A DNA stretch of 64,000 nt. Origin: Lepidodermella squamata (lineage: Eukaryota; Animalia; Gastrotricha). Below, in pieces: positions 5,600 to 31,980 of this stretch. Within the stretch, counting starts at the first letter, position 1. The number at the start of each line of letters is the position of its first letter. The stretch spans positions 3,534,001-3,598,000 of the forward strand of contig JBLDXI010000015.1 of assembly GCA_047495785.1 (NCBI GenBank), given 5' to 3'. The position numbers and the translations under genes were made by a program. The notes under the pieces were generated by a model, which saw only the letters and a list, made by a program, of their open reading frames with translations, had not been told where the DNA came from and did no database searches.

Positions 5600-6919
5600 T
5601 CATAAGCTTAATCTGTAACTCAGCTCTTTTGAATATCGCATTAGTGAGCAAAATATGCAAATTTCATCACTTTTCTGGCCCATTAAGACTGAGTTATTGC
5701 CAGGGAAAGCTGACCAAACCAAATCAGATAGTTTGAACGGGTGAAGGGCTAAAAGGAGATTGACATCGACAATGTCCCAAACACTTTTCGGGAGTTTGAT
5801 TGTGTACCAGTTGCGATCGTCGATAATTCCATGATTTTCCAGGCAGGCAAATATGGTTGGAACTCCGATCTCTTGAAATACCCGGTGCTTCGCCAATAGG
5901 TCGAACAGGAGAATCGCCATAGGAAGGTCCTTTTTAGCCACGTAAAATATGTCAGATTTTGCTCCGATTGCTCTTCTCCTACCCTTAGCAACCTGGGCAA
6001 TGCGGTTAAGGCAATAGCCATGATAGTCTGGCTCGAATCGGGCCATTTTCTCTAGATCCTATATTGATGGATGAAATATTTTTACTAAAATTGAAACTTT
6101 ATTTCAACTTACTGTGAAGAAGGATTTTAGCTGATTTTGATAGATTGTCACCCAGCCAGCCCACGAATTGGGTGTCCAGCATTCTTTCGAGCTATTACAC
6201 CTCAGCAGGGTGTCTACATCGTAATAAAAGTCATCCCTGGACATGACGTAGCTTATCGATAAATCAAAGTTATTCGAATCGAAAATGAAATTCCAATATC
6301 CGAACAACGCATCATCATGAACGAGAAATACGCCACCTATCTCATGCCTAGGTAATTTCGATGTTCTAACGGCTTCATTAACGCAGTAATAAACAGTTTC
6401 TCCAGCGCCTTCTTTAACAGGTAGTTTTATTTGATAGTTGATGAATCTCCGCTGGAAGTAAGCGAAAAAATTACGCGAAGTTTCATTGAAGTTCCGATAT
6501 ATTCCCATCGTGAAGTCGGTAGAATCAGGCGAAGGGCCGCAAAATCGTATCTCGGCGAAATTTCTGCCATATAGCGCATTGACTAGGGGCGCGACATGAT
6601 AATTTGTCGCCTGGTTGAAAGCTACGATGAGGATAGTTGATTTCTTGAGCCGAATCGCGGCATCACGCGACAATTTATGAGTTTCGAATAAAATATCGGG
6701 CGGTAAATGGCGCGATTCAAATCGGCACGATTTATTGTAGCGGCATAATTGCGACCAAATCAAGCGATCACTTTCGTGCCAAAATTGGTCATCATCATCG
6801 TCATGAGTCGGTGGGCTTCTGTTCTTCGGCGATATTAGGTCGAAATGAGAGATGACCCAGTAAAATATGGCGATGATGTGGCACGCAAAAAATATACGTA
6901 GGTAGCAGCGGTTTTTCAT
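5600..6919 (-). CDS. Type II membrane protein, STELLO/DUF288-like putative glycosyltransferase (2 exons)
   Basis: N-terminal TM; motifs LIVAFN, LY..F..I.FCGP, YYC..EA, FLVHDD..F.YWN, SDIFYV, VFQEIGVPTI..CL, HPFKLS resemble the STELLO-like C-terminal region; first AUG at 6919. Confidence 0.65.
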
Positions 6920-7470
6920 TATAAAATTGTGCCACCTTAATATACTGAAAAGTATGACAAGCAATACATTTTCATATTCATCTTCACTTTCAATTTTATT
7001 TCAGTTTCAATGAGGGCAGGCCTGAATAAAATTTCTCTGAATAATCACGTTGATGAAAGGATACATAGATGAATGGAAATGAAATTCTGCAATAAAGCTT
7101 GGATCCAAAACGGAAATTATTTTATTTAACAGCCGCTTCGGAGGGGGTGTATGCATTCCTTTAAGACATTGAGACTATTGTTGGCAACAATATGAGGTGA
7201 GCTTTCATAATGCTCATTTTTTTGTATGAGTAATCTTCAACGTGGGCTATAAGCTCAACGATGTTACCTGGCAGATGAACACACATATATGAGCTAATGT
7301 TACATTATATTATGAAAGTATAAAAATGAGTTGTAGCCACGATTTTCTTAATTTTCATCAAGATATTAAGATATAAGTTTACTCAAATAGACAGGAAACA
7401 GCTTTTAAATGGACATGCTCGATCAAGATTCCCGGCGATCGTCAAAGCTTGAAAATTTACTCATACCTTG

Positions 7471-10400
7471 ATGAAAGCACGAATCCTATCAGTTTCGTCA
7501 GCTTTGATCTGCTTGGCCTTTGGCTTATGGCCGGCTCAATGTTCCCCAATGGTTAGGAATTACAGTTTTGTAGCTCGTATGGGATGTTAGTTTATTTTCC
7601 AGGCATCTCGTTTCGAGCTGCCATCAGACACTCAACCTTGCCGCGTCCCAGCTCTACAAAACGGCCGGTTTTTGTCCTACTCTCCTAATGAGCCTCGGCA
7701 AAATTGGCCATCTCTACAGGCGAATTCGCAAGTCAGCTTAGGAACTACCTTAATCGCGGATTGCCAACCTTGCTACCGATATGCCGATAACTCGACTGAA
7801 TCTGATAGCGAAACTGAGATCGAATGCCTTGGAAATAATCTGTGGAACGGCATTGTGGGGAATTGCCGGAGAATCGATGATTGCAGCCAAGTGGTAAGCC
7901 TAAATGTTAAAAATGTCCCACAAAATTGAAGGAATCACTGATTATACCGAATCAGACCTTACCAGCTGTCAAGCCTGCTGGCAATAACACAGAATGCGGC
8001 CGCCCGAATGACGATCTGAGCGACGGGGAAACACCACAGCCTTGGATGGTAACCTTAAATAACGACAATATTAAGGAGGCTATTCTCCTTTATTTTCAAT
8101 GTTTTAGGTTTACATTAAAGTTCAGAAAGGCGGAATCTTCATCAGAAACTGTTCCGGCGTACTTATCGATCAAACGTGGATCCTGGCAGCTTCAGAATGT
8201 ATCGAAACTACGGATGGAGAGAGGCCGACCTCGTAATTAAAATTGCGGTGATTTTGCACTAGAAGTCTTAATAGTCATTTTTTTCAAGAATTTCGCTCCA
8301 AGATGGCAGATCGGTTTTCGTTACTAACATTGTCGAAGAGCCGCAGAACAAACAGTTGGCTTTATTGATGATTAACCCTTTCGTCATCTATTCCGAAAAA
8401 GTCCGAGCCCTATGCCTGCCAGACGTCCAATGCGAATCTAAAAATTCATCGATTTGTACCGTTGGATCTGTTTCAAGTTACGAGAATGTCAAAATTTCAC
8501 CTGCTAATTGCCCCTCGCAATTTTGCGCGAATGCTGGCGGTAATAGATCAGGGTCACTTTTCATGTGCGAATTCGCTGGCCGACTTTTCGCATCGGGAGT
8601 TGAACTTTCTCGCAACAATAACTCATGTTGCAGCGACCATCAGATCGGCTTCGTCGCAATTTGTCCATTGATCACCTGGATACGGTGGACAATCACCAAA
8701 TTCACGAATAGAGGGGAATGTAAATTTGATTTCATGTTAAAAATTGCGTAGAATTAATGAGCTGTTTATTTGATAGATTGTCCCGATGAATTTCCTGAAG
8801 TCTATTCTGGCGTAGTCGATGCAAGGCTAAGTTTTTCCGATGTCGATCAACAGCCTCAAAATGGCTATCGCATCGGAACTATCGCTGATATAACATGCAA
8901 TAATGGCTATAGTTTGTTCGGGTCTGATCGCATTATTTGCACAGCAGCCGGGGTTTGGAGCCTGCCTGGCACCTGTTTATTCCTGAGTAAATTCAAAAAT
9001 TTCCAAATTTTCGAAATTTCAATTCTTTTTCGCTAGTTACCCCTGCTCCTCCAATCGCGGAGGTCTTCATTGATTCAGAATCAACGACCGAGGCAGTGGA
9101 AATCACTAATCAGCCAGGATTATGTGGCGTTCCAAATAAGCTTCGTAAAGCTAATAACGCGCCCGAGTTTCCTTGGATAGTATGTTTTTTCTATTTCGAA
9201 AATCTTACCTATATTGCTGGGATTTTCCATCTATCAGATAACAATTAAAAGTTACCTCAACACCTTGACTCAAGGTTACAAAATTTGCGACGCTGTTGTT
9301 ATCGATTACGAACATGCAATCACAGCTGCTCATTGTGTAGTCCATCGGACTGAAATCGCTAAAAGGTGAGATTGCATTTTTTTTTAATTTTCAAAAACTT
9401 TTCAAATTTATAACCAGAGTTGACCTCTCCGTCTTTGAGGATGGCGATTACCAATCAGTTCGATCAGTTCTGGTCATTTTACATCCGAAATTCAAAAATA
9501 AAGACCTAGATTATTCGATTTTCGATTTTGCGATCATTAAAACGAGCAGAATGCCTTCGATAACGCCGATATGTTTGCCTACGACGGGCTCTAATTTTTG
9601 CAGATACTCGAGATGTGAAAACGCCGTGATTATTGACAATGGTATAATTACCTATTATAACCTAAAAAAAATTTAATTTATTTATTTTCAAATTTACAGT
9701 TGAAAATGGGAGGAATTTCACGAAGCTCAACTTGACCATAGCTCTAAGAGCTCATTCGAATCGTTCTTCAATTTCGATATCAACAGCGTGGGCAAATGGG
9801 ACTTGTGGCATGGAATGGAGTAACCCTCTAATGTGCTCTAACGACGACGGACGGTACCAATTAGGGGCTTTAGTGCCGAATGGGCGGTTGAAATGTTCGA
9901 TTAAGCCTGCTGCTATCTACTCGAACATTTGTCCGGCGCTGCCGTGGATCAACCAAGTACTGTCAGGATGGACAGGATTTAAGAGTAGGAAAGCAAATAA
10001 ATTATCATCTTGAAATTACTCACAAGCAGTGACGGACATTATTAGGTTAATTTCTGTAGAGCAAAAGCCGTTTGAATAAAATTTCTGTTTAGAAATCTCA
10101 TTTGGAGGCGTCTCGTTAACTGAGATTCCAACTCAAAATTAAGGCATGCCAGCACTTATTTTTCGATTTCGATTGCGATTTCAACTTCTTGATCGATATA
10201 TAGTGATGCAAAGTCGAAATCGATTCCCGCTATTTTAAATCGATTTTAATTTTATCGATTTTAAAAATTGGTGATTTTTTCCAAAATAAACTGATCAGGA
10301 GACCATCGTAAAAAATGCCTCATCCACCAATCCGATGGTGCCAGGTAGCTAAAAGAAAAATTCCGGGGTCATTAGGGTGACACATAGAGTGACATTTATC

Positions 10401-13400
10401 GCAAAATTCACGTGATGGGAAAATACATCGGTTAAACCTGCTAATAAAAAAATTTAAATGCTCATGAATTTTGGGAAAATCTGGAGATTAAAGCCTAAAT
10501 TTGGGGGTGATATAATCCATTCCAATTCTCTGGTTTCAGTCAAATCCAGCAATATCTCACATACCGTAACGGGTCCTAACTTTGGACAAAACACCTCTTT
10601 TAATTTAAAAAAATTCGGTTTTCGTCTAAAAAAATGGAAAAAAATATCCAAACCTCCGCCCAAGGAAGCTGCGTGGACAGGTGAAGTTTGGAAAATTTAG
10701 AAGCTCACCTTGATTTTAAAAAAATTGGTAAAGAAACCTCTAAATTTGGACACTTGTTCCCAAATTTGGACACCTCATTTGCATATGCTAATTCGACCTT
10801 ACACACATTTTATTTCTTGTTGCGCAATTTTTCTCGTTTTTTCAAAGGCGACTTTTGTAGCCGCGCGCTTGAGACTAAAATAATGCTACCGATAGGATTC
10901 ACTCATCGTCAGATTTAATGCAGATGTACCGTAACGAGTGGTAACTTTGGACAAAACGTGTTTTTCGAACATTAAAAATCAGGCTTTGCTCCTAAATTTC
11001 TGAAATTTTTACCAAAGGTGGGGACGGTGATTCTTGAATTTACTGCAAATTCTAGAAATTTTGAGAATTTTACCTGACCTTTGGCTAATTAATATGTGTT
11101 CCGGTAACTTTGGACAATTAGAGGGTAGCTTTGGACACTCATTTGCATATGCAATTTCATTGCAATTTCATTGTGAATTATCTGTTATTCATGGTTTTTC
11201 ATTTAATCTTGGGTCAGATATCGAAAAAAATTATGAACAGATGGCGCATCATCTGTTTCTCGGAAGTTCAATAAAAATACATTTCTGCGCAGCAGCATAC
11301 TTAACCCGTCCAAAAGTGTCCAAAATTACCCCAATTTTCACCTGTTTTTCAGGTAAATGCTCTGCTAAAACGCGTCGACGGATTGTCATTTTTTCTTCGA
11401 TTATAGGGAGAGTAAAGATAGGAGAATACTCATGCCAACTTTCATTGAAAACTGATCGATTATTAGAAAGATAGAAGGGGGGTCCCAAAACGGCACCCAA
11501 AGTCTCACTGCTTGCAACTTTTTCTGAAATTCGATTTCAGCTCCAATCGTCTTGATTTTTATGTCAAACAAAAGCTGAAGAGACGGAGCATTTTATGCGA
11601 AAACCCCATGATTTAAACTTTCAACCCTGAAAAGTTGCAAACCTGCAAAGCCGAAAGTGTCCAAAGTTACCCTGTCCACAATCACCACACGTTACGGTAC
11701 GCAATACCAATTATACACCAGGATCTTAATACCGTTAATGAACCATGAATCTTCTCGAAACTATGATAAACCAGGTGAAAATGTCTCTGAAGCACCGAGT
11801 CTCATTTAGAAAGTAGACGGAGGGATATCAGTTTGAGGTTAAACCATGGGTTGAGGTTTGAATGAGTCGTGGAGTTTCTTTATCGCTGAACTATTGACAT
11901 GTTTTACCGAAAGTGAACTGTCATTTGTCCCATGGTACGTGCTGTTCACCTGTTTAATTAAAGCTGGCGCCGTCGGATTTGTATTCGGATACATTATTAT
12001 TCCCTATGCTCTCTAGCCAAAATCATGAAAGCATAGCCTAGGCCGGGAGTCATTAAGCTAATTCCAATGTTCTATCAATGCGATGCCATTCTTTTCAAAA
12101 ACTGACAAAAAGCATACATTTCGTTTGCATATGCATAGAGATAAAAATATCATTAAAAGTGTCCAAATTTAGAGGCTAAATTCAAAGTCACCTGTATCAA
12201 AATTGGCTTGTCCTTCTGCCGAGATTTTTTTACAGAATTTAGTTTAGGTAAATCCCCATTTGCAAAAAAAATTTCAGCCCCAACCGTTCACAGGTGAGCA
12301 TTTGGCAAGGGGGGTCCCAAAACACCTTTCTGAGTGATCGAGCTTCGGCGATTTTTCGCAAATCGATAGTACGTGAAATCATTGGCAAATTTGGTACCGT
12401 TGGAAAGCCCACGAAGGGAGCTATTTTTCAGTGAAATTTCTAAACTTTTATCAGTTATGCACAAATTGATATTTGGGGCTAAAGCTCAAAGTGTCCAAAT
12501 TTGGGGTGTCCAAATTTAGGGCGCGTTACGGTGTAAGTAAATTATTTTTGCAGATTCGTATTTCACCGAAATTCCGGAACCGAATTACGCGTACGAACTC
12601 AACATCATTATTGGAGTTCCAGTTTCGTTCATTTCAGCTGTTGGCACACTACTTATTTTGTACCTCGCGAGATGGTTTTACAGGTAAGGCCAATTATGAT
12701 GGCAGTAACTTTTATTCTCACTGGAACCCCTCGATAGCTCGGGGTTCCAGATCGGGGGGAAATTATTTTTCTCCATGGCTAGCCATAGAGTATTCCCTCA
12801 TTCCAACAATAAGCGCATGGTAAAATTCAGCCTTTGGGAAATTAAATTTTTTCTCTATGGCTGAATTAAAATTTTTAAGGTGGAATTTTCATTCCAATTA
12901 TATATGCTATTTTTACAGGGGTATGCCTCTTTAACACCCCAAAAAGTGGCTCCAGATGGTGCGCATGTAGGAGTAGGAGTAGGATTAGGACCCTTATTTC
13001 GCAATTTTCTTTTTCAGCCACAATGCCCTGATAAAAGAATCCGAAAAACGCCTGCCTAGAAACGTTTACGAGCTTATTAAAAACCAGCCCAACTGCGAGA
13101 AAGTGTTTCGAAAATTAGCCGATGACAACTTTCGAAGCCGAGTTCTCTTGGAACCTGAGTGCGTTAGAATCAACAGGAACCAGGAGCTAGATCGTGGCTA
13201 CTACGGAGTGGTACGTCGAGGCGAATTCCATCTACGAAATTCAACGATCGTCCAAAGCGTGGCCGTTAAATACCCACTTACAACGGCTGGCGAAGACGCT
13301 GAGAGACGGCTATTCGCTATATTCACAGAAGCTTTGGCTATGGCTGAACTTAATCACGAAAGTCTACTTCCATTAACTGGAGTTGTCATGGCTGATGATG

Positions 13401-15159
13401 GCTTGCCGATGCTGGTGACACCATTCATGCCGAACGGATCCCTAAATAGATATTTGCTAAATATGGACAGAGATTTATATGAATCTGATTCATCACTCCA
13501 GCCGGCGCTTAACGAAAAGTTGCTTGGTTTTTGCCGCCAAATTTGCGACGGAATGGCTTATCTAGCCGGGAATAGAATAGTTCACTGCGATTTGGCGGCG
13601 AGAAACGTACTGCTGGACGACAATGAAATTTGTAAAATTTGCGATTTCGGTCTGGCGAAATGTTACAGCACGGATAAAAATTACTACACGTGATTTTAAA
13701 TTTCCTCAAAATTCAACTTCAATTAATTTTTCTTTTATCAGATCTAACCAGAATCGCGTGCCACCTCGATGGCACCCACCGGAGTCCTTCGGGACACAAC
13801 AACAGAAGGCGAGGTGGAAGTTTAACGAAGAAACTGATGTTTGGTCATATGGCGTAGTAATGTGGGAAATTTTTACACGTAAGCGTCGAACAATTATTTT
13901 TTCATGTCAATTTTGCTGATTTTTTTCGCAGTTTGCAAGTTACCTTTCGAGGATAGAAAAAACGAAGACTGCGCACATCATTTAGCATGGTTACACCAGC
14001 GATTCAAAGACGCAAAAATCGACAAATCACTCGATGATCTACCAAAACCACGTTTATGCTACATCAATCTGTAAGATTTTCGTTAAACAGAGTGTCTCAT
14101 AATTTGCGCAATATTTTGTGGGAAATTAAATATATCAGGAGACTCTTCCATCCTTTATCCACAAATTGAACATTAACAGGAGAAAACCCGGAAAACCCCG
14201 ATGGTAACTGGTTCGGTAATTTTTCGGTATTTACCCGGTTGGACCACATTTTTCGGATTTTTTAATCGCAATGACAAGTGACATAATTGATTACTATTCT
14301 CATGGCGAAGGTACGACTTTTCAGCAGTGACATTCCGCAAATGAGGGTCAAATCATCAGTGATTTTTCATCAGTGAAAATGAGCATTGACATTTGAGCTG
14401 CGACATTTGCGCAGTGAAAAATCATCCGTGACAAATCAGCAGTGATTTTTCTTTATTTATCCTACATTTTTTTCAAATTTATTATTTTCATCTCAGTGAC
14501 ATTTGCGCAGTGACATTTCAGCGGAGACATTTCATCAACAGAATCTCAGCCGTATTCAGCATAGGGGACTATGCGTTGCATTAAAGTTGAGCTCAAAAAG
14601 TGCAAGTTCAATGCCCGAGATTAATAAATAAAAATTGATGAATTATCACTTGCTCATTTGTCGCTGCTGAAATGTCACTGCTTGTCTTAACACCATTTAT
14701 TATTTAAATTAACACCAAAAGTTGATTTTTAGGAATTGCTACTGACAAAGTGTCACTAATGAAAAGTCACTGCTGAACCTCATTTGCTGAAGTGTCACTG
14801 CTGAACCTCATTTGCTGAAGTGTCACTGCTGAAAAGTCAGACCACGTCTCATGGCATCTTGAAATTTTGTAAGATTTTTCTGGCCACGAGTTATGACTAT
14901 TTGAGTTTTTGATCCCGTTTCCGTGTATTCTCTTTGTTTGCGTTACCTATAGAACACCCTGTAATTTAGGAATGAAGCTGATTTGATTTGTGTTTTATTT
15001 AGATACAACAAAGTTATGAAGACCTGTTGGCGGTACAATCCAATTCACCGGCCTAAATTCGCTGATCTCAAGATTTGGTTACAGGATCCGGATCGTACCT
15101 CTAGAAGCTTATTGGACGATATGTTAAATGACATTGATGGCGACTTTATCTTTGAATAA
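7471..15159 (+). CDS. Receptor tyrosine kinase: signal peptide - Sushi - inactive trypsin-like - Sushi - inactive trypsin-like - TM - MET-like Tyr kinase
   Basis: Signal MKARILSVSSALICLAFGLWPAQC; CCP cysteine/Trp patterns at 7640-7870 and 8775-8985; trypsin folds at 7990-8710 and 9120-9985; TM exon 12554-12683 (IIIGVPVSFISAVGTLLILYLA) phase-compatible with the flanking exons; kinase VAVK, HCDLAARN, DFG..DKNYY, DVWSYGVVMWEIFT, CW...RP. Confidence 0.75.
10564..12531. mobile_element. Non-autonomous TIR DNA transposon (CCGTAACG...CGTTACGG termini, Tc1/mariner-pogo-like) in an RTK intron
   Basis: Left end TA|CCGTAACG..AACTTTGGACA, right end TGTCCAAATTT..CGTTACGG; repeated TTTGGACA/TGTCCAAA subterminal motifs; no transposase ORF. 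Confidence 0.7.
10929..11697. mobile_element. Related MITE nested inside the 10564-12531 element
   Basis: TA|CCGTAACGAGTGGT...ACCACACGTTACGG|TA, i.e. TIRs plus TA target duplication. Confidence 0.75.
12700..12990. repeat. Intronic repeat fragment related to 25240-26310
   Basis: Shares GGAACCCCTCGAT..CTCGGGGTTCCAGATCGGGGG(G)AAATTA..CCATAGAGTATTCCC and TGCGCATGT.GGA with the 26150-26310 region. Confidence 0.7.
14088..14961. mobile_element. MITE (CAG.GTGT termini) in the last kinase intron of RTK1
   Basis: CAGAGTGTCTC...GAACACCCTG|TA; internal GGAAAACCCCGATGGTAACTGGTTCGGTAATTTT shared with the 25005-26440 element. Confidence 0.65.
14307..14846. mobile_element. Foldback-type MITE nested in the previous element, 8-9 bp TSD
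   Basis: Direct repeat TCTCATGGC at 14298-14306 and 14847-14855; TIRs GACTTTTCAGCAGTGACA / TGTCACTGCTGAAAAGTC; many CAGTGA subterminal repeats. Confidence 0.75.
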
Positions 15160-17847
15160 ATACTGAGTTGTTTTACGTACGGTGTATTTTTGAGGCTTAC
15201 AGCGGCTTCTCAAGTGTTTATACCTAGGGAGTTAGAACTTTCAAATTTCTATTCATTCGACAAAAATAACAACAAACAAATAAAAATTAATTTTTACGAT
15301 GAGACCGCAGGCAGATGCGAATCTAAAATAAGGAATTTTTTTGAAAATGAGAAACCTTCAAGTTTTTCCTCCAGCCTATTTACGTATTCTATCCTGATGC
15401 ATCTGAATGAGAAAAATGGTCAGGCGGGATGCTGATATCGATGATAAGGATACTGAATTATCGCCGCTTTATCATGTGTCCGATATATATGTATATTATA
15501 TAGGCGGCGACGTTTTGCGGCTGCTTTGTTGTCCGAGCAGCGCCACATTTCCGCTTTTATTGAATAATCTATTATCATCACAAAAATGATGCTGTGATGC
15601 GCGCGTTAGCTTATTATTTTCTTCGCGCAAGTAGCTTTGTAAAATGTGTGTATATGTCTCGCAGCGCGCGCAGTCGTCGATCTTTGCTGCCACAAAGTGA
15701 CGCGCACAAATATACGCGCTTTTACAGCCGCGCATCATCGCTTCCGGGGTTACTTTCGGGCTGCGACTCCTTTCCGAAATGTATATTCTTACAGTAATAA
15801 AATATATCGACAACACGCCCCCTGTTTTGGTAGCAGCAAATGCGCATTTTTCAATTTAGTCAACTTTCGTAAATAAAAATTATTAACCAATGCGTGCGCG
15901 CAAAAAAATGCGCAAATTAAGGTGGATGCGCTTTTTTGCACCTGATTATTTTCCGCGCACGCGCACAAGTGCGGTAACGCAGATAATTAATACCAACCAT
16001 GGTACTGTTTTTTATTAACGATTTTTATAGCCCCGCAAAGTAGCCAACTGAGCTTGTTTACGAACTGAGCCAAGGTGCATTATCGCCACAAGTTCGCCGC
16101 ACTGATTATGAGAAGAAGATGCAATCACGCGATTTTGATATATTTATTTTAAAGGTCGAAGGCGCGCAGTGTTTCGATAAATACCGTGAAGGCATGTTAA
16201 ACACGCCTTGAAAGCTTTTTCGCGCGCTATGAACTCACCGTCTGCTGGTTTTGCTGTATCCAGCCGTGCGTGTAAAATGTTGCTAAATGCGTTTTGGTTA
16301 AACAGCCTGGGCTATATGTTGGTAATTACTGACCGCGTAATGTTTATTTACGTTTTCGGCTTACTGTTCAACACGCGTGAAGTACAAAATGACACCATTG
16401 AGGTTCAGCGCTCGCGATTTATATGTAAAACAATATCGTTAATAATCGTTATTAGCGATATGGGCTATACTATTTTTACGTATGTAAGGAAAACGACATT
16501 GAATAATTACATCGCCTAGGTTCCAGAAATTACTAAAAATTGCGCTCTCTTGAAATTATATTACCCGGATTTTCCCGGTTTTTTCCGGATCAACTTAATT
16601 CCCGCACTGAGACTGGGAGAATCTTATTACATTTTTTTTGCCTCCGTTTAGATCAATATAACTATGTTTTTCATATATATTGCAATATCACCGCTGAGTC
16701 TAGACATTATTAACTGGTATTTTTGTGCGCCAAGTGTCATCCGTGTCCCGTCGCAGAAGCAGACAATGTGCCCGTTTCGGGTAAACAAATTTAGGTGCGA
16801 TGCACGGGTGTAATAATTCCATGCGCGCAATATACTTTTTTTCGCGTGAAATATCTTCGTTTTCATAGAAAAACACAAGGACCCCTATCCCTAAAGGTCA
16901 ATTTTCAAATAATGGTATGTTGGATTAACCTAATAGGTTTGTGTTGAAAAATATGCGTTTTCTTGGGTTCATGTTATTACACGGGGACAACTTTTAGGTT
17001 AGCGTCTTGTGCAAATAATATATCAAGAAAAAATGTAAATAATAATACGGAATATGCCGTGATAAATACAAGGTTGCCGAGCGAGGAGTCAAGTATTTTC
17101 GCGCGCTGCCATCGATAGCCGGCCATAGAAAATGAAGAGGCTACTAGCGGCAGAGATATACCTGCATTTCAGTATATATGTTTACATCTAACCTATTTAT
17201 AGTGGTATAAATGCCTTATATTTCGGGTGTTTTCACTGCTCCTCAACAATATCGCATGCCACCTATTGTAGGTATATTACCGGTCATGTTTGCGGTTGTT
17301 ATAATATACCCGTGTAGTAGTATAATAATGAAGCGCGCACTCGGTAGTAATAATAATATGGCGCTCTTTTCTCGCGCAGTCGAAAATTCCGAAACGACAG
17401 CAGATATAATATGTGTTTCAACGCGTTATTTTGCGCTGTTGTTATGGCTATATGCGATTCGCGTATTGATAGTCTCGGCTTAACATGGTTATAGTTGTGT
17501 TATAGACCGGGCTTATACTCCTCCGAACAACTATATTATATTCGCGGTATAATATTTTTTCGGGTTCATTAGCCGCGCACGAGAACTTGGCGACTGAATA
17601 CGAGCATTAAAACCTAATCACTCGTAATTACTACCTGATCGCACAACATATACCGCTTATATAAGAACCACCCCCAATCTATACGCAAAAGCAAGCAGTT
17701 TTTCTCATAGCCACACCCTCCATTCACATTTTACTATACGCAAATCATAATGTAGAATATTTAATCGATTAATTCTGCCCCAAAATTCGGAATGACAATG
17801 GCGCTTCAATTGAGGGTATGTAGCTGCCTAGTTTGGAGCTGAATAAC

Positions 17848-20800: not shown

Positions 20801-22680
20801 CGATCCCGAATCAAGCGTAATTTTGAATTTTTATTAAAAATAATTAATTAATTTTTATTCTATAGGGTTTTCAAGTTGTTTTCAACAGCGGCGTAAAGAA
20901 ATCTGCCGCTGCAGTTCAGGGTGATTTCCGAGGCTTTCGGGCTAATTTCGAGTTTCTCGTGCCTCCCCCGGTCCCGTCTCGAGAAGGAAGGCCCGTTAAC
21001 AGTTCCGTCAGCATCGAATGTCCGGCTAAGCAAATCGTAGTCGGACGTAAAGGAGCGATTGTTAGCCCTGATTATCCAACATCTTTCTACCCAGCCCATG
21101 GCGTAACTTGTGACTGGACTATTCAAACTTACAGCGATAGTGCAAAGCTTCAGTTGATGCTGACAGAGTTCGAAATTGAGGGAACTTACAATCCAACAGT
21201 AAGCTAATACAACAAATCAAGCTATTTAAGGTGTTTTGATACAAATTGTCAGGTTGGACTCGAGAATTGTCAAAACGCTGCTCTGGAGATTTACAGCGGC
21301 CCCAGTTTGGATCAGCCGACTGTCATTCGATGTTCGAGTGCTTCGATCCTAGCTGGAGAGACTTTCATTACGCATGGAAACAAAGCCAGAATACGGTAAA
21401 GTTTATTTTATTTTTCGTAACTTTGTTTGAGGTTATTTTTTTCGCTATAGGTTTCTTACGTCACCAGCTTCGACTGGTGGGCCTGGTTTTCGGATAGATT
21501 GGAACGAAGTATTTGATGTTAATGGTAAATTTCGATATTAGTCAATTTATTGACTGCCTAATTATTGAGTTATTTTTCCTAGAAACCGAATGTCGTATGT
21601 CACCAGCGACTAAATTGTGGTGCTCTGGATCTCGGCGATGCATTTCATCGGAGCTGCGATGTGATGGTTTGTTCATTATTATTCAATTTTCGAATTTTTC
21701 GAAAAAAGCCCAAATTTTCCTTTCCCTATTGGCTTATGCTATTTTATAGAGAAAATTACGGGGATAAAACCAGTGAAAACTCTATATTTTTATCAAATAC
21801 GGTTACGGAGATATCCAAGCGTGAATTTGGTCACGTGACCTTATCTGCCGTCACACCTGAGTGATTATCTCAATAACGGTGATAGATACGAAGCCGCTCT
21901 CAGAGACAAAAATCATCAGAGAGATGAGATCTATTTACAAATTTGTCTACAAATGATAATTTTTGCAAAAAACATTATTTTTACAAAATATGTGAATTCA
22001 GGAATTTTAATTAAGGTGGATTAATTATTATTAATTTCAAACGTTTTTTTTCTACAGGAATTCCGCATTGTGGTTTGACGGACTTGACTGATGAAGACAA
22101 GTGCTCGCGGCCGATAGCGAACCCAGCCAGTCTGGTTCTGATCGCTGCCGGCGGATCAGCCGCCCTTCTCAGCCTCGTTGTCATCCTTCTGGTTGTAATA
22201 TGCCGTTTGCGGCGGCAACGCGTCAAGCATAGGCAACTCGAGAAGGAAGCCCTGCCGCCAACAAGCGACAATAGCTCGCCGGAACACGCGACCCGGTCGA
22301 CAAGCCGGCGCGATAGCAGCAGTGATTCATCGATTCGCTACAACCTTAACCGCCGGTTGATCATAAGCGACGAACCACAGGCATCGGCGTTGCGGAGTTC
22401 GTTCATCGAACGCAAGCCAGCCCCACCGCCGCCATTACCGCCGCCGATAATTAACACTCGCAATCAGCATCACCATCACAACAACAATTACCAAAATCAA
22501 CAGCAGAATCATCACTACCCGGCTAAGCTGAGCGTGAAGACGACGAAATGTGTTGAGGAGACGGTGCTCATCGATACGGAAACAGTCAGTGGTAGCACGG
22601 TGACCGCCTCGGCCAGTTCGAAAAGCAACGGCGGCGGCGCGAAACGAATGCAGCTATTCGAAAAAATCACTATTGTTTGA
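17848..22680 (+). CDS. SOL-1/LEV-10-like single-pass protein: signal - 5 CUB - LDLa - TM - cytoplasmic tail
   Basis: Signal MFRKLQGVIWIFLWLFGIV; CUB signatures (SPNYPGLY, CPFDFVNIYDG, SPFYP..C.Y.F, SPHFPRPYP, SPDYP..C.W.I); LDLa CISSELRCDGIPHCG..DEDKC; TM LVLIAAGGSAALLSLVVILLVVIC; ends EKITIV. Confidence 0.8.
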
Positions 22681-22928: not shown

Positions 22929-25900
22929 ATGCTTGACCGGACGCCAATTTACCTTCTCTTGGCTGCAATTGGATCAATTTTGGCAGCAGGCAATATTTGC
23001 GATTCGTCCTATCAGTCCGGGCTGGTTAGCTTGCTGGCGAAAGATTCGGAGAAAAAGGATTCGAAATTTTGCACTGGTATTCTGATTTCTGATCAATGGG
23101 TACTAACATCAGCTGATTGTTTGGCGGGGAAATCTTCACCTGAGTAAGTTGTCTATCTCTAAAAGATCTTTAGAGGCTTCATCACAATTTTTCTAGCTTG
23201 GAATTCGGAATGAATGACCGTCTCCGTTACGGTTCATTAACTGAAGGTTCAATCAGCAGAGGAAGTTTGCTAGTTTGCCAAGAAGACAATGCAGATTTAG
23301 CTCTGGTGAAAATCGACTCTCCAGTTAAATTTTCCGATAAAATTCGGCAAATTTGCTTGCCAGATTCTAAACTATGCAGTTCAAACCCACTGAACCGTGA
23401 CGTCTCTGAAATCGACTCTTGCAAACAAGGTTTTGCAGTCGGCTGGAGTAAACGGCCACCAGTTGGGAAAATCCAAACCTCCGGCATTCAAAATTGGAGC
23501 ATGGCAATTATTCCTTTGAATGACCGAAGCTGTGATCTAGCTGTTAATCAAACGGACAAAATTTGCACTACAACAGATTTTACAGTTCTCGAGCCTGGTG
23601 GAGTCCTAATGTGCAGTCCGAGCGACAACGGGCAATTTTATGCCATCGGACTAGCGAATAACGGAACCTATCGAGGAATTACTATACCATCAGTTTTCAG
23701 CCGAATTTGCTCTCATTTAAGCTGGATTAATCAGGTCATATCCGGAAATCATAAATGCTCGAAAAATGGTAATTAATTGACCGATAGAATTTTTTCTCAT
23801 TCCATCGAATTGCAGGTTTGTCCAATGAGGCAATTATAACAATTGCTGTCACAGTCACCGTTGGTTTGGCCATCATTTCAGCCGCTGCCGGTTATCTTAT
23901 CTATCGATTCAACCTCATGAAGAGAAGTCGCAACCAATTGCTGAGAATTTTCAGCTCGAATACAGCTACGGAACAAGATTCACCTGCGACCCTATTAGAA
24001 AAGCTGAAACTGGACCCATCTTGGAATGAGATATCGCCGTTACTAATCTCACCACCTAGTCAGCTTAAAATCGAGAAAAGGCCGTTCGACAAAGGAAATT
24101 TTGGGCGAATTTTCAAAGCGAAACTGATTGGAATGAAGGAACGATTAGCTGTTAAAGTTGAATATCGCTTTGATTCACATCGTAATCACGAGTTGATGTT
24201 ATCGGAAAGGGTGCATTTCGTGATACAGACTCTTCCGATCATGACCTTGGATCATGAAAATGTCCTGAAAATTTTGAAATTAGCGATAATTCGAAATGAC
24301 ATACCTTGCATTGTGACACCCTACATGGAGAACGGTAATTTGAGGAAATTTTTGCGGAGCCGTAAATTTATTGGTGAGACGCTGTTCGGATACTGCCAAC
24401 AAATATGTAAAGGAATGGCCTATCTCGAGGGCAAAACGTGGCTTCACCGGGATTTGGCCTGTCGCAATATTTTAGTGGATATCAATCAGCAACTGAAAAT
24501 TAGTGATTTTGGTCTCGCGCAATGGCTTCCGCTAAATGCAACTAGGTGAGCATATTGGACTTTTTAACCTCATTTTTTGTTATCTCCTAATTATAGCTCA
24601 CCAAATGTTGCTATTGACGCCACTCCCCTGCGCTGGCATCCACCTGAATCGTTTAACGATAATAAATTCGATCTGAGGAGTGACGTTTGGTCTTTCGGCG
24701 TAGTTGTCTGGGAAATTTTTACCCGTGAGAATAGCTAAAACAAGGAATTTAGTGAAATTTAGTTTTTTTCCCTCCCCATAGTATGCATTGATGAGCAGCC
24801 TTACGAGGACAGATCGGATGCATCTGTTAGGCAATTCATCAATAACGGCGGTCGATTAAGCTGGCCAATGGAAAAGTTTCAGTCATATATCCCATTGTGA
24901 GTCTTTGCAACTTATTTGTCTTTGATCTCTCCTAAAAATTTGAACAGATTTACGCTGATGAAACCGCTAAGGTTGTAGTAGTGGATTTCCATGTAGACTC
25001 GGTACAGCGTGTCCCAAAAGTTGCACAACAATTTCTTGATTTAGCCACGTTTTGTTGGATTTCCAATTAATTTTATTAAATTGAACCTACCGAGAGAACC
25101 TTTATACGCGATTTAAAACCGAAGAAAACCTGGAAAACCCCGATGGTAACTGGTTCGGTAATTTTCGGTATTTCACGCGTCTGGACCAAATTTCTCCGGA
25201 CTTTTTTAATGCTATTAACAAAAGACATACTTGATTAATATTCCCACATACGCATGGTTAAATTTTGCCATGGGGAAACACATGTTTCTCTATGGTTATA
25301 AATATTTCTCTATGGCTTGAAACTGCCACAAATTTGGGCAGCATTTTGCTAGAAATTGGCCTCAAAACCCCCAGAAAACCCATTTTCTCGAGAATCTTAG
25401 GAAAGTCACTAGAACAACGAAAACCCCAATTTTATTTAAAAGCAATTTCACGTGCAAAAACAAAAATGTGACCAAATGAGGTGAAAAAGAGGTCGTCGAA
25501 ATCTCTTGCTGGCAGCCGTCGCGATGCAGATCCGGTTTCCCTCCTGATTCGCGGTTTTGAGCGACAACGCAGAAATTCAGCGACTAGCCAAAGCAACGTT
25601 AGACGCGACAATGACTGGTTTCTCGGCGAGTCTTCGACTGGCGAAATTGACCCATATCCACGATTAATTTCCGCTGCGACCTGAATACCATCGGATACCA
25701 TGCAGCGAGCGGATGGCTTTTATCGTTGCCAGTCTCCCAAACGGCGCGATGTAGATTCATTGAATTCTGTGCGCAACCGGCTGGCTGGCGATCGATTTGA
25801 GAGGATTCTTCGAGGCAACGATTTGTTCGCTTCCAGAATCCATCGAACCAAGGCAACTGATGATCTCGGCTTGATGATCGGGCTTGATATCGGCGCTCTG

Positions 25901-26955
25901 AATTCCATGAATCTTGAATACTGATGCTTCGGCCAGCCGGAGAGCATGACGATTTCGACGACGAATGAAGGTTGACCAAAAATCAAGTTGCAAACAAGAA
26001 AAAATTCGCCGGAATGAAAAATGATTTTCTTTTACAAACGAAGAATCATTTTCGTGAAATTTTAAGTTGGATGTTTTATTTTCTCAAAATGGTTACTGTG
26101 AATTCACCCCTGTGTACCTATTACACCCTTTTAGGGAGCCTACAGGTGTCGTGCGCATGTGGGAATAGGATTACTCTATGGCAAACCATGGAGAAATATA
26201 ATTTCCCCCCTCTCTGGAACCCCTCGATTCGTTTGGCTGCGCCAAACTCACTCGGGGTTCCAGATCGGGGGGAAATTATATTTCTCCATGGTTTGCCATA
26301 GAGTATTCCCTTATTCTCGTGATTTCTTGAATTGTTTTCCAATTTTTCTGGCCATGAGATGTGACTTCGTCTCTCATTTTAGAGTTTCTGAACCCTTTCC
26401 CGTGAATTTTCTTTGCTTGTGTTACTTATGAGACACGCTGTAATATTCAAATCAACGATAAAATTTGTGCGACCTCGAGTCATTTTTATTCATGATTTTG
26501 AGATACAGCGACGTTTCGGGTACCAAGTTCCCTTCTTGAGGCTAAAAATCTGGAATAATCGCAAGAAGTAGAAAGTAGCACAACAAGTGGCGATAGGAAA
26601 AAACATAGTGGTCAGGATGTAGTGAGATCAACGCATTAAAATTGCAAGAGCTGTATAAGTAACGCCATATCTCATACTATATCCTGACCACTATGTTTTT
26701 TCCTATCGCCACTTGTTGTACTATACTATCTACTTGTTGTGATTTTTCTAGACTTTTAGCCACATGATGGGTACGAGGTACCCGAAACGTCGCTGTATCT
26801 CAAACTTATGAATAAAAAATGACTCGAGATCGCAACATTGTTTTCGTTTTGATAGATTTACGTTGGTGAATAACGACTGCTGGAATGCTGTTCGAATCCA
26901 CCGACCTTCCTTCGCAACTTTGCAAACTATTCTAGATCAACTATTTCAAAATTGA
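22929..26955 (+). CDS. Receptor tyrosine kinase: signal peptide - inactive trypsin-like domain - TM - Tyr kinase (paralog of 7471-15159)
   Basis: Signal [19 protein letters not shown]; [43 protein letters not shown]; 47-nt phase-1 intron 23769-23815 joins it to [26 protein letters not shown]; [39 protein letters not shown], last exon CW..HRPSF at 26856-26955. Confidence 0.85.
25005..26440. mobile_element. MITE of the same family as 14088-14961, carrying a nested inverted-repeat element
   Basis: TA|CAGCGTGTCCC...GAGACACGCTG|TA; nested inverted repeat ATTCCCACATACGCA (25240) / TGCGCATGTGGGAAT (26153). Confidence 0.7.
26450..26853. mobile_element. ~400 bp inverted repeat resembling paired Penelope-like pseudo-LTRs with degenerate hammerhead motifs
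   Basis: Arms of ~170 bp are reverse complements; each carries stem-loop + CGAAACGTCG followed by AATAAA. Confidence 0.55.
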
Positions 26956-30600: not shown

Positions 30601-31980
30601 ACACCCCAGACCAGCGGCATCCCTACTCGTGGGGCAGCACCTTTTGGTATACGGTCGGCAATTTTCTCGGCATCGGCACTGACATTGGGGCGACTGCTTT
30701 GTCGACGCGAGTTGTCACGATTTCCTGGTGGTTTTTCACCCTGTTAATCATCAGCTCATACACCGCAAATCTCGCTGCTTTTCTAACAATCGAAGCTCAA
30801 GTTTCTCCGTTTGAAAACGTTGAAGAGCTAGCAGGCCAAACTAGCGTACTTTACGGTACCTTGCGAGGCGGCTCAACGGAAAATTTCTTCCGAGAAGCTA
30901 AAATCGATACCTACAAAAAGATGTGGGCTTTTATGAGAGATAAGGACGTGTTCGCGAAGTCGAATGACGAGGGTATCGAACGGGTTGTGAAAAGTAAAGG
31001 CAAGTATGCCTATTTGATGGAGTCGGTCTCCTTGCAGTACGTTCTGCAAGACCCTCAACGCAACAAGGACTGCTACCTCCGCCAGATCGGCGGTTTGATC
31101 GACTCGAAAGGCTACGGCCTGGGCACGAAACGCCAAGCTCCTTACCGAGATCTTCTATCCATGGCTATTCTTCAACTTCAAGAAACTGACAAGTTGACAA
31201 TGATGTACGAAAGATGGTGGAAAAACGACGAACTTCGATGCAGTGAAAAAGAGGCAGCATCTGGAGGGGCGAAATTTATGAGTAATTTTCTGAAAAAATT
31301 AATTAAAAAAAATCCACCTTAATTTATTTGTTTTCCAGCAATGCAACAATTTTTGGGAGTTTTCGTCGTTCTCGGTCTCGGGTTTTTCTTCGGCGTTGTT
31401 ACGGTAATAATGGAAGTGCTCTGGAACCTTCGAAGGCGAGCGCCTGGGGAGGTAATTGTCGCCTATCTTTCTCAAATTGTTCCTTTTATTTCTTGATTTT
31501 CAGAGAGCTCGTTATTGTCAGCGTATTTGCGGGTATTTGGGAGATACAGCTTCATACTGGTTCAAGAAACAACGGCCTTATCAACCGAGGCGAAAGAAGA
31601 GTATTGCCATGGCTCTTGCTTCGACAACCCATCAGTTGGGCATCATCCGCGAGGTTGAAGAAGATCCTTACATCCAACAGGAAGAACAGGAAGCGAGTGA
31701 TTATGAAATGGAACAACCTACTACTACAACCAAGCCGACTAAGGATAACTACAGCGTTAACAACAGTGATTACGGTGGTGAAGTTGAAGTTGAGCTGATG
31801 CCGCATCAAGCCGATCAGCAGTTGGACGATGGTTCTCGAACTATCAGGAAGCTGAAAGTGAAAAACAATGACCCAAATCGTTCGGTGCCTTCGCCAATTT
31901 TGCGCTACAAAAGCGATACAGCTCTAACGAACGAGCCGCGAGATTTCTTGACGCAGACTGATGACAAATTTTTAGGCTAA
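27639..31980 (+). CDS. Ionotropic glutamate receptor subunit (AMPA/kainate-like), multi-exon
   Basis: Signal peptide; ATD; [40 protein letters not shown]1, [48 protein letters not shown]4 [10 protein letters not shown]. Confidence 0.92.

What the first reader, a model, noticed from the sequence alone, without database searches (positions are those of the whole stretch)
7471..15159. Second pseudoprotease-RTK: (Sushi-SPH)x2 ectodomain on a MET-like kinase
Seen: two Sushi + trypsin-like units (LAASEC lacks His; the second keeps TAAHC but has GMEWSNP in place of GDSGGP). They splice with matching phases over a 2.6-kb TE-filled intron to a TM exon not shown by the ORF track (12554-12683) and then a kinase. 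It shares with the 22.9-kb gene the odd RWHPPESF motif, IC..L.WINQV.SG and three kinase intron positions, so the two form a family. The activation loop DKNYY resembles MET DKEYY. Established: Sushi-protease is the complement C1r/s/MASP/factor B arrangement, and MET's ligand HGF is itself a dead trypsin domain. Inference: a complement-like or tethered-ligand-like receptor.
Basis: partly seen in the sequence, partly recalled or inferred. Interest (0 to 1): 0.82.

Follow-up and report, generated by a model that had tools for sequence, protein, structure and literature searches.

The report
Receptor kinase with two dead-protease modules
An intact 15-exon animal gene most likely encodes a cell-surface tyrosine-kinase receptor whose outer part is two "Sushi plus dead trypsin-like" units, a layout I found in no paper or database, though no RNA yet proves the two halves are one transcript.

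Summary
Fifteen exons (7471-15159, + strand) with GT-AG borders and matching phases give one 1081-residue reading frame. It encodes a signal peptide, Sushi, a dead trypsin-like domain (SPH1, 0 of 3 catalytic residues), Sushi, a second dead domain (SPH2: His and Asp kept, Ser replaced by Trp), one membrane helix, and a complete tyrosine-kinase domain.

The 2.6-kb intron before the membrane exon holds a nested 1.97-kb inverted-repeat transposon. One contig in a DNA run lacks that transposon but keeps the exon.

The gene at 22929-26955 is a true relative. It shares RWHPPESF and IC..L.WINQV.SG, three kinase introns at identical position and phase, and the phase-1 intron before the membrane helix.

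"MET-like" is only partly right. MET-type receptors are the best-scoring named kinases at 38-43% identity. In a tree, however, this kinase falls in a separate clade (support 98/94) whose members carry CUB, flytrap or dead-protease ectodomains.

No RNA run exists, so the join at 9984/12554 is inferred. A secreted isoform ending at 10013 cannot be excluded. The complement-like and tethered-ligand ideas are untested.

This scan already found dead-protease receptor kinases elsewhere in this genome. This gene is a new variant, the first with Sushi units.

The parts
7471..7551 (+). Exon 1: start codon and signal peptide (MKARILSVSSALICLAFGLWPAQCSPM)
   Evidence: ATG, hydrophobic core, GT donor, phase 0. 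No signal-peptide tool was available, so this is judged from the sequence.
7603..7893 (+). Exon 2: divergent Sushi/CCP module 1 (6 Cys, C-x2-P, NG, conserved Trp)
   Evidence: Pfam silent. MASP-1 CCP E 0.15 and CR1 E 0.36. Atlas features 0.95, with 27 of 30 nearest clusters Sushi. AF2 fold uninformative, pLDDT 38.
7956..8048 (+). Exon 3: linker with the 'CG' of a protease pro-region but no R|IVGG activation site; ends in PWM
   Evidence: Sequence; phases 0-0.
8108..8232 (+). Exon 4: SPH1 N-terminal part; WILAASEC (His57 replaced by Glu)
   Evidence: Pfam Trypsin 0.0018 and DUF1986 0.0005, profile positions 20-46.
8289..8719 (+). Exon 5: rest of SPH1; Asp102 replaced by Gln (NKQLALL), Ser195 replaced by Arg (GGNRSGS)
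   Evidence: Matriptase alignment places both motifs (E 0.78). 37% identical to the paralog SPH. Profile A1 against PDB 4.6e-10. 30 of 30 Atlas neighbours are Trypsin.
8777..8986 (+). Exon 6: Sushi/CCP module 2, a phase 1-1 exon
   Evidence: Pfam Sushi 3.6e-8; complement receptor and factor H CCPs.
9037..9179 (+). Exon 7: linker with 'LCG' and LRK, ending in PWI; no canonical activation site
   Evidence: Sequence.
9238..9365 (+). Exon 8: SPH2 N-terminal part; AITAAHC (His57 kept)
   Evidence: Pfam Trypsin 0.0029, profile positions 21-47.
9418..9641 (+). Exon 9: SPH2 middle part; DFAIIK (Asp102 kept)
   Evidence: Pfam Trypsin 0.028, profile positions 63-115.
9700..9984 (+). Exon 10: SPH2 C-terminal part; CGMEWSNPLMC (Ser195 replaced by Trp), ICPALPWINQVLSG; donor GTAGGA at 9985, phase 1
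   Evidence: Chymotrypsin C chain 1e-5, aligned motif for motif.
9985..12553 (+). Intron 10 (2569 nt): 577 nt of single-copy DNA, a nested inverted-repeat transposon at 10562-12532 (inner element 10926-11700), then 21 nt before the acceptor
   Evidence: Inverted repeats I1 and I2. Read depth in the thousands. An X2 contig joins 10563 to 12543.
10011..10080 (+). Read-through stop (TGA 10011-10013) and AATAAA at 10075-10080: a possible secreted isoform ending ...SGWTGFKSRKANKLSS
   Evidence: AATAAA occurs 0.95 times per kb on this strand, so it is weak evidence.
12554..12683 (+). Exon 11: stalk and single membrane helix (LNIIIGVPVSFISAVGTLLILYLARWFY); has no Met, and an in-frame stop lies 18 nt upstream
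   Evidence: Kyte-Doolittle peak 2.44; the only such segment after the signal peptide.
13018..13689 (+). Exon 12: juxtamembrane region and kinase N-lobe through the activation loop (DRGYYG, VAVK, HCDLAARN, DFG, DKNYY)
   Evidence: Pfam PK_Tyr_Ser-Thr 1.9e-36; MET 82 bits.
13742..13878 (+). Exon 13: [10 protein letters not shown] and DVWSYGVVMWEIFT
   Evidence: Pfam 3.1e-11; alignment A2.
13932..14070 (+). Exon 14: kinase subdomain X with an insert
   Evidence: Aligns to the paralog, with the same intron on both sides.
15003..15159 (+). Exon 15: subdomain XI (CWRYNPIHRPKF), a tyrosine-free tail, and a TAA stop overlapped by AATAAA (15155-15160)
   Evidence: Pfam 0.0044.
22929..26955 (+). Paralog: 6 exons, 619 aa, signal peptide-SPH-TM-kinase; 30% identical in the TM and kinase part
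   Evidence: Model rebuilt; sister of this gene in the tree.

Best explanation
One gene encodes a type I receptor tyrosine kinase of about 1081 residues. Outside the cell it carries two tandem units, each a Sushi/CCP module followed by a catalytically dead, non-activatable trypsin-fold domain. Inside it carries a complete kinase. That kinase keeps the catalytic Lys, Glu, Asp, Asn, DFG and the paired activation-loop tyrosines, but has HCD in place of HRD and PPE in place of APE. Inferred mechanism: the dead protease domains, probably supported by the Sushi modules, act as protein-binding modules. Ligand binding brings two receptors together, the kinases phosphorylate each other on the YY pair, and a signal follows. 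The gene belongs to a lineage-specific kinase clade (RW[HY]PPES) in which one TM-kinase cassette is found behind different borrowed ectodomains: CUB, Venus-flytrap, one dead protease, and here Sushi plus dead protease twice. What is shown: the domains, the dead sites, the intact frame and the family relations. What is inferred: the splice across 9984/12554, kinase activity and ligand binding. The ligand is unknown.
For: One open frame of 3246 nt through 15 exons, all GT-AG with fitting phases. Pfam Sushi 3.6e-8 and PK_Tyr_Ser-Thr 1.9e-36 and 3.1e-11. Trypsin-fold homology: exon 10 against chymotrypsin 1e-5 with GDSGG aligned to MEWSN; profile A1 against 346 solved trypsin-fold chains, best 4.6e-10; Atlas neighbours. 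The membrane exon has no Met and an in-frame stop 18 nt upstream, so the TM-kinase half cannot start translation on its own. The ectodomain has 32 Cys and 10 N-x-S/T sites. The paralog joins SPH to TM across a 47-nt intron of the same phase 1, 8 residues after INQVISG (10 residues here), and shares three kinase introns at identical position and phase. Only the donor at 9985 puts both the TM helix and the kinase in frame. Intron 10 is long because of a nested inverted-repeat transposon; one contig in a DNA run lacks it and keeps the TM exon with 3 differences in 226 nt. Careful tree: this gene plus the paralog at 95/56, within a six-member clade at 98/94 with P0125 (CUB), P0142 (weak CUB), P0137 (flytrap ORF upstream) and P0115.
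Against: There is no RNA evidence. Both runs that hold the locus behave as DNA and show no GT..AG joint. A stop 27 nt past the donor and AATAAA at 10075 would allow a secreted product. The transposon ends 21 nt before the acceptor and might weaken it in this haplotype. Sushi 1 and SPH1 are very divergent: SPH1 and SPH2 are only 20% identical, and both exon-level AF2 models failed. HCD and the Asp in the glycine loop are unusual for an active tyrosine kinase.
Confidence: 0.7

Rival explanations
1. There are two products. The upstream ten exons make only a secreted (Sushi-SPH)x2 protein that ends at the TGA at 10011-10013 and is polyadenylated after the AATAAA at 10075. The TM-kinase exons are either a separate transcription unit with an unseen 5' exon or are no longer used. 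A milder form, compatible with the main explanation, is that both a secreted decoy and the full receptor are made by alternative polyadenylation.
For: The stop and AATAAA lie just past exon 10. The intron is 2.6 kb where the other thirteen introns are 51-932 nt, ten of them under 65 nt. Earlier notes of this scan (s1-422647, untested here) report the related ectodomain in secreted, anchor-only and kinase forms in this genome. No RNA contradicts it.
Against: AATAAA occurs about once per kb on this strand by composition (61 in 64 kb). The TM exon has no start codon and has an upstream in-frame stop. The phase and position of the intron match the paralog's 47-nt SPH-TM intron. The downstream exons keep an intact frame, canonical splice sites and all kinase motifs, which is unexpected for an unused remnant. 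The intron length is explained by a transposon missing from another haplotype.
Confidence: 0.17
2. The gene is a young pseudogene or a silent copy. The frame is still intact, but the gene is no longer expressed or correctly spliced, for example because the transposon landed beside the acceptor of the TM exon.
For: There is no expression evidence. The transposon end lies 21 nt from the acceptor. Residues at usually conserved kinase positions are unusual: HCD, DxGxxG and PPE.
Against: There are no stops or frameshifts in 3246 nt, and all 28 splice dinucleotides are canonical. The DxGxxG and RWHPPES variants are shared with the intact paralog and with relatives, so they are family traits rather than decay. 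A transposon-free haplotype exists.
Confidence: 0.08
3. This is a MET-type receptor carrying its own HGF-like ligand (a tethered dead protease domain), or a complement-type recognition receptor.
For: MET/RON are the best-scoring solved kinases, and DKNYY resembles MET's DKEYY. HGF beta chain appears among weak exon-10 hits (E 0.11). MASP-2 and haptoglobin appear among profile hits.
Against: The kinase lies outside the MET clade. There is no Sema, PSI or IPT domain for a tethered ligand to bind. The tail has no docking tyrosines. The SPH profile scores better against TMPRSS6, enteropeptidase and chymotrypsin than against HGF, MASP or haptoglobin. There are no CUB-EGF modules, no thioester partners and no active protease.
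Confidence: 0.03

Closest known systems
MET/RON receptor tyrosine kinases (HGF and MSP receptors)
   Same: They are the best-scoring named kinase family: 82 and 77 bits in PDB, and 38-43% identity to Sema-PSI-TIG receptors. They share the paired activation-loop tyrosines after DK, and both lineages sit in one larger tree clade (97/91) that also holds RYK.
   Different: This gene has no Sema, PSI or IPT ectodomain and no C-terminal docking tyrosines. Its kinase is outside the MET clade, with HCD for HRD and RWHPPES for KWMALES. In the MET system the dead protease domain is in the soluble ligand (HGF), not in the receptor.
Haptoglobin (CCP module plus dead serine-protease domain)
   Same: The unit architecture is the same: a Sushi/CCP module directly followed by a trypsin-fold domain that has lost catalytic residues and works by binding (established knowledge). 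Haptoglobin is among the profile hits at 1.1e-6.
   Different: Haptoglobin is secreted, has no membrane helix or kinase, and is cleaved between its chains. No specific kinship was shown here.
C1r/C1s/MASP and Limulus factor C type Sushi-protease enzymes
   Same: A CCP module sits immediately N-terminal to the S1 domain, with the linker 'CG' kept. MASP-1 CCP is the best solved match of Sushi 1 (E 0.15), and MASP-2 appears among SPH profile hits.
   Different: Those are active, zymogen-activated proteases with CUB-EGF or lectin modules. Here the activation site and the catalytic Ser are lost in both domains, and the chain ends in a kinase.
Dead-protease receptor kinases already noted by this scan in the same genome (s1-411509, s1-393953, s1-384321, s1-422647, s1-374039)
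   Same: They share the idea of a catalytically dead trypsin-fold domain in the ectodomain of a tyrosine-kinase receptor. The in-window member shares motifs, introns and tree position with this gene.
   Different: Those have either a lone SPH or LamG-SEA-LamG-SPH. This gene has two SPH domains, each preceded by a Sushi module, plus an extra intron between TM and kinase and a non-RD (HCD) kinase. Only the in-window paralog was checked here.
Venus kinase receptors and other lineage-specific RTKs built by domain shuffling (PMC3703292; choanoflagellate RTKs, PMC3584944)
   Same: A standard TM-kinase cassette is joined to an ectodomain borrowed from another protein family. The phase-1 intron before the TM exon and the phase 1-1 Sushi exon fit exon shuffling.
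   Different: The borrowed module here is a pseudoenzyme of the S1 protease family, and the kinase is from a different clade.

Membership tests
Receptor tyrosine kinase (type I, single pass) | N-terminal signal peptide and a single membrane helix between ectodomain and kinase | tested here: met
   A hydropathy scan finds one helix at residues 686-711 (peak 2.44). The N-terminus has a basic-hydrophobic-polar signal-peptide pattern. No dedicated signal-peptide predictor was available.
Receptor tyrosine kinase (type I, single pass) | Tyrosine-kinase catalytic domain with TK-specific motifs (xDLAARN, PxxWxxPE) | tested here: met
   PF07714 at 1.9e-36 and 3.1e-11. HCDLAARN, DFG, VAVK, the alphaC Glu and PPRWHPPES are present. 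The HRD Arg is Cys, making this a non-RD kinase.
Receptor tyrosine kinase (type I, single pass) | Ectodomain and kinase on one mRNA | not testable with these tools
   No RNA run holds the locus. Both runs laid are genomic contigs.
MET/RON family | Sema-PSI-IPT ectodomain | tested here: not met
   No Sema, PSI or TIG hit in any of the ten ectodomain exons at E up to 1.
MET/RON family | Kinase domain inside the MET clade | tested here: not met
   The MET clade of 13 rows (99/98) excludes it. It lies in a separate six-row clade at 98/94.
MET/RON family | C-terminal multi-substrate docking tyrosines | tested here: not met
   The tail after subdomain XI (ADLKIWLQDPDRTSRSLLDDMLNDIDGDFIFE) has no Tyr. 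That this is a MET hallmark is established knowledge.
Peptidase S1 (chymotrypsin fold) | Sequence homology to the S1 domain over both barrels | tested here: met
   Exon-level Pfam Trypsin hits at profile positions 20-47 and 63-115. Chymotrypsin 1e-5. Profile A1 at 4.6e-10 with 346 chains. Atlas neighbours. The fold was not confirmed by modelling.
Peptidase S1 (chymotrypsin fold) | Catalytic triad His57-Asp102-Ser195 | tested here: not met
   SPH1 has Glu, Gln and Arg at these positions. SPH2 has His, Asp and Trp. Both are pseudoenzymes.
Peptidase S1 (chymotrypsin fold) | Zymogen activation site (R/K followed by IVGG) | tested here: not met
   The linkers read CGRPNDDLSDGETPQPWM and CGVPNKLRKANNAPEFPWI. 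There is no IVGG-type new N-terminus, and the segment is 4-5 residues shorter than usual.
Sushi/CCP module | Four-Cys framework with conserved Trp; profile match | tested here: met
   Module 2: Pfam 3.6e-8, plus CR2, factor H and DAF CCPs.
Sushi/CCP module | The same, for module 1 (7603-7893) | tested here: inconclusive
   Pfam silent. MASP-1 CCP E 0.15. No BLASTP match to module 2. Atlas features 0.95 with 27 of 30 neighbours Sushi. AF2 pLDDT 38.
Complement C1r/C1s/MASP proteases | CUB-EGF-CUB-CCP-CCP-active SP architecture | tested here: not met
   No CUB or EGF hits, and the proteases are dead. Only the CCP-SP order is shared.

The most novel reading that the evidence does not exclude
The two dead protease domains keep a usable substrate cleft and act as bait. 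They would capture a specific extracellular protein, such as a protease inhibitor, a cleaved peptide end, or a microbial factor that targets host proteases. The receptor would then wire a complement-style Sushi-protease recognition unit directly to phosphotyrosine signalling. Together with the dead-glycosidase receptor kinases noted elsewhere in this genome, that would make 'dead enzyme as sensor on a kinase' a general receptor-building principle in this lineage.
Probability: 0.12. Interest if true: 0.85.

Novelty: new variant of a known kind. Interest (0 to 1): 0.55.

Why it matters
Receptor tyrosine kinases are defined by what their ectodomains recognise. None of the classical families, and none of the papers or protein hits I searched, has a trypsin-fold domain in that position. 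In the one well-known case, HGF/MET, the dead protease sits on the ligand side. A family that puts dead proteases on the receptor itself, here paired with Sushi modules as in haptoglobin and MASPs, would be a clean natural example of pseudoenzymes recruited as receptor binding modules. It would also be a tractable case of exon shuffling onto a common TM-kinase cassette. Its value is limited for now by the missing transcript evidence, the unknown ligand and the unidentified host organism. The general idea has also already been flagged several times in this genome by this scan.

Tried and rejected
1. RNA evidence. Laid on 9200-15159, both behave as genomic DNA: contigs run through introns and there are no GT..AG joints. 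The splice could not be tested.

2. AlphaFold2 on exon 2 alone (pLDDT 38) and on exon 5 with the four-row alignment A1 (pLDDT 35). Both models are useless, so no fold search was run.

3. BLASTP of Sushi 1 against Sushi 2 gave no alignment.

4. The bacterial-type promoter and terminator scan upstream of the gene found nothing and is irrelevant to a eukaryote.

5. Search for the architecture elsewhere. The 150 nearest kinase representatives have no match to any ectodomain exon. Eighty metagenome loci (480 kb) with RWxPPES-type kinases have no SPH profile hit and no Sushi or SPH tblastn hit. None of the 120 best relatives of the P0142 kinase carries PF00089 or PF00084. These are weak negatives: the length windows exclude proteins over about 1000 residues, and the collections sample this lineage poorly.

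6. Literature. Three full-text searches and one kinome paper (PMC8662651, which has no occurrence of trypsin, sushi or protease) gave no description of such a receptor.

7. The alternative donor at 9957 (CAA|GTACTG) was rejected. Joined to 12554 it loses the TM helix and the kinase frame.

8. Exons were joined only inside local scripts, for the frame check, the pairwise alignment with the paralog and the tree.

9. The organism was not identified. The earlier guess of a rotifer was not tested.

Full report
**Gene model**

Reading 7400-15400 and testing the borders by script gives 15 exons on the + strand:
- 7471-7551, 7603-7893, 7956-8048, 8108-8232, 8289-8719
- 8777-8986, 9037-9179, 9238-9365, 9418-9641, 9700-9984
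- 12554-12683, 13018-13689, 13742-13878, 13932-14070, 15003-15159

Every intron begins with GT and ends with AG behind a pyrimidine-rich tract. The phases fit, and the joined frame is 3246 nt (1081 codons plus stop) with no internal stop. Ten of the 14 introns are 51-62 nt. The exceptions are intron 10 (2569 nt), intron 11 (334 nt) and intron 14 (932 nt), all of which hold high-copy repeats (read depth in the thousands). The stop codon is overlapped by an AATAAA (15155-15160).

All such calls were made exon by exon by reference. Exons were joined only inside local scripts.

**Domains**

Pfam finds:
- Sushi in exon 6 (3.6e-8)
- the tyrosine-kinase family in exons 12, 13 and 15 (1.9e-36, 3.1e-11, 0.0044)
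- sub-threshold Trypsin matches at the correct profile positions in exon 4 (20-46), exon 8 (21-47) and exon 9 (63-115)

Exon 10 aligns to the chymotrypsin C chain at 1e-5, with CMGDSGGPLVC opposite CGMEWSNPLMC. Exon 5 aligns only weakly to matriptase (E 0.78), but both conserved blocks are in register: DIALL opposite QLALL, and GDSGGP opposite GNRSGS.

A profile built from exon 5, the paralog's protease-like exon and exons 9 and 10 (A1) matches 346 solved trypsin-fold chains. The best is 4.6e-10 (TMPRSS6, enteropeptidase, chymotrypsin, protein C); MASP-2 and haptoglobin score about 1e-6. Language-model neighbours of exon 5 are 30 of 30 Trypsin clusters at 0.92-0.95.

Catalytic residues:

| Domain | His57 | Asp102 | Ser195 |
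|---|---|---|---|
| SPH1 | Glu | Gln | Arg |
| SPH2 | His (kept) | Asp (kept) | Trp |

Neither domain has an R/K-IVGG activation site, although the 'CG' of the pro-region linker is kept. Both are therefore non-activatable pseudoproteases.

Sushi 1 (exon 2) is the least secure element. Pfam is silent and it shows no BLASTP similarity to Sushi 2. Its best solved matches are MASP-1 CCP (E 0.15) and CR1 (E 0.36). It does have the C-x2-P, NG, Cys and Trp landmarks, and 27 of its 30 nearest Atlas clusters are Sushi at 0.95. Exon-level AlphaFold models of exon 2 and exon 5 failed (pLDDT 38 and 35).

**Membrane and kinase part**

Exon 11 encodes the only strong hydrophobic segment after the signal peptide (residues 686-711, Kyte-Doolittle 2.44), followed by basic residues. 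The ectodomain has 32 Cys and 10 N-x-S/T sites, against 2 such sites inside the cell.

The kinase keeps VAVK, the alphaC Glu, the catalytic Asp and Asn (HCDLAARN), DFG, DKNYY, DVWSYG and CW..P..RP.F. Three positions are unusual:
- DxGxxG in the glycine loop, shared with the paralog
- Cys for the Arg of HRD, specific to this gene
- PPE for APE, inside RWHPPES

I read it as a probably active, non-RD tyrosine kinase. That is inference.

**One gene or two**

No RNA is available. The run search returned one low-coverage run labelled as a guess and one genomic run. On 9200-15159 both show contigs running through introns and no GT..AG joint. The join at 9984/12554 therefore rests on indirect evidence:
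1. The phase is 1 on both sides, and 9985 is the only donor that puts both the helix and the kinase in frame.
2. Exon 11 has no Met and has an in-frame stop 18 nt upstream. The first Met downstream lies inside the kinase. The TM-kinase half therefore cannot be translated alone without an unseen 5' exon.
3. In the paralog, the protease-like exon is joined to the TM exon by a 47-nt intron of the same phase, 8 residues after INQVISG (10 residues here).
4. Intron 10 is long because of a nested inverted-repeat element. The outer arms are at 10562-10588 and 12507-12532 and the inner arms at 10926-10953 and 11673-11700. This leaves about 600 nt of single-copy intron.
5. One X2 contig (record 13, depth 63) joins 10563 to 12543 and 12768 to 12991 while carrying the TM exon with 3 differences in 226 nt. 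This is most simply a haplotype without the two repeat insertions.

Against this, a read-through stop lies at 10011-10013 and AATAAA at 10075. That hexamer occurs 61 times on this strand of the window, about once per kb. A secreted isoform made by intronic polyadenylation is possible and would not contradict the receptor.

**Family**

I rebuilt the gene at 22929-26955 as six GT-AG exons encoding 619 residues: signal peptide, one dead protease domain (Asp, Asp and Pro at the triad positions), TM helix and kinase.

It is only 30% identical to this gene over the TM and kinase part. Its protease domain is 30% identical to SPH1 and 41% identical to SPH2 over partial local alignments of 99 and 54 columns. 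It nevertheless shares [18 protein letters not shown], the DxGxxG loop and three kinase introns at identical alignment columns and phases (2, 1, 2).

SPH1 and SPH2 are just 20% identical. They share the phase-0 intron after PW[MI] and the phase-2 intron about ten residues after the His-motif Cys. The latter is an old feature of S1 genes (established knowledge), so the tandem duplication is plausible but old.

**Kinase classification**

Against solved structures, the best single domains are MET (82 bits), RON (77) and EphA2 (72). Against 1.84 billion representatives no hit reaches 50% identity over a full domain. The best single-domain scores are a flat 80-92 bits and include Sema-PSI-TIG receptors, a WIF (RYK-type) receptor and an Ig-Ig-FN3 (TAM-type) receptor.

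A careful maximum-likelihood tree of 56 kinase domains (298 columns) gives the following:
- This gene and the paralog are sisters (95/56).
- Both lie in a six-member clade (98/94) with P0125 (CUB-TM-kinase, RWHPPES), P0142 (weak CUB, RWHPPES), P0115 (RWYPPES) and P0137. P0137's metagenome contig has an ANF-receptor ORF directly upstream.
- The MET clade (13 rows, 99/98) excludes them.
- Both lineages lie in a larger clade with RYK (97/91).

'MET-like' is thus a fair description of similarity, not of membership.

**Novelty search**

- None of the 150 nearest kinases matches any ectodomain exon.
- Eighty metagenome loci with RWxPPES-type kinases hold no SPH or Sushi match.
- None of the 120 best relatives of the P0142 kinase carries Trypsin or Sushi.
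- Three literature searches and a holozoan kinome paper describe nothing similar.

These are weak negatives, because of the length windows of the searches and the sparse sampling of this lineage.

Within this scan the idea is not new. Notes on the same genome report dead-protease receptor kinases at several other loci, with LamG-SEA-LamG-SPH or a lone SPH. Of those I checked only the in-window paralog. What is new here is the Sushi-SPH unit, present twice, which is the haptoglobin/MASP-type pairing.

**Verdict**

The gene is a new variant of a known kind: a receptor tyrosine kinase with a borrowed pseudoenzyme ectodomain.

Nothing ties the protease-like domains to complement or to HGF more than to ordinary S1 proteases, and the receptor has no Sema domain for a tethered ligand to act on.

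Noticed in passing
window 10562-12532 (inner element 10926-11700): A nested inverted-repeat (MITE-like) transposon with termini TACCGTAACG...TTTGGACA. Both elements are high-copy, with read depth in the thousands. Contigs in both runs join 10925 to 11697, so outer-element copies without the inner insert exist.
   Followed up: partly
window 12768-12991 and 26202-26327; 14173-14340 and 25076-25228: The same repeat families sit in introns of both paralogous receptor genes. One encodes ...GSRSGGNY[FI]SPW[LF]AIEYSLI... and the other ...[11 protein letters not shown][RQ]VF.... The second lies in the homologous last kinase intron of each gene. The 12768-12991 copy is absent from one X2 contig. With copy numbers this high, the shared location may be chance.
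   Followed up: no
L002:1068-4404 (metagenome scaffold, ERZ23486764): An ANF-receptor (Venus flytrap) ORF is followed after about 30 nt by a TM-kinase ORF of the same RWHPPES clade, and after another 30 nt by the rest of the kinase. This looks like a flytrap receptor kinase from an unidentified eukaryote with very short introns.
   Followed up: partly
window 22075-22680: A 201-codon ORF just upstream of the paralog encodes a membrane helix (LVLIAAGGSAALLSLVVILLVVI) followed by a Ser-, Pro- and Gln/His/Asn-rich tail with no Pfam match. It may be the last exon of another single-pass membrane protein.
   Followed up: no
window 28445-45488: A run of receptor genes on the + strand: ANF-receptor and ligand-gated-channel exons (28445-31322), an ankyrin-repeat ORF (32890-34089), a weak rhodopsin-type GPCR (35603-36655), and two long ANF-receptor ORFs (37748-40129 and 43173-45488).
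   Followed up: no
window 6104-6964 (- strand): The upstream neighbour on the opposite strand has a STELLO-type glycosyltransferase match (8.8e-7).
   Followed up: no
window 13129: Run X2 reads A where the window has C, at full depth (93 of 93). This changes Asn to Lys in the juxtamembrane segment (DDNFRS). It is a fixed difference between the sample and the assembly.
   Followed up: no
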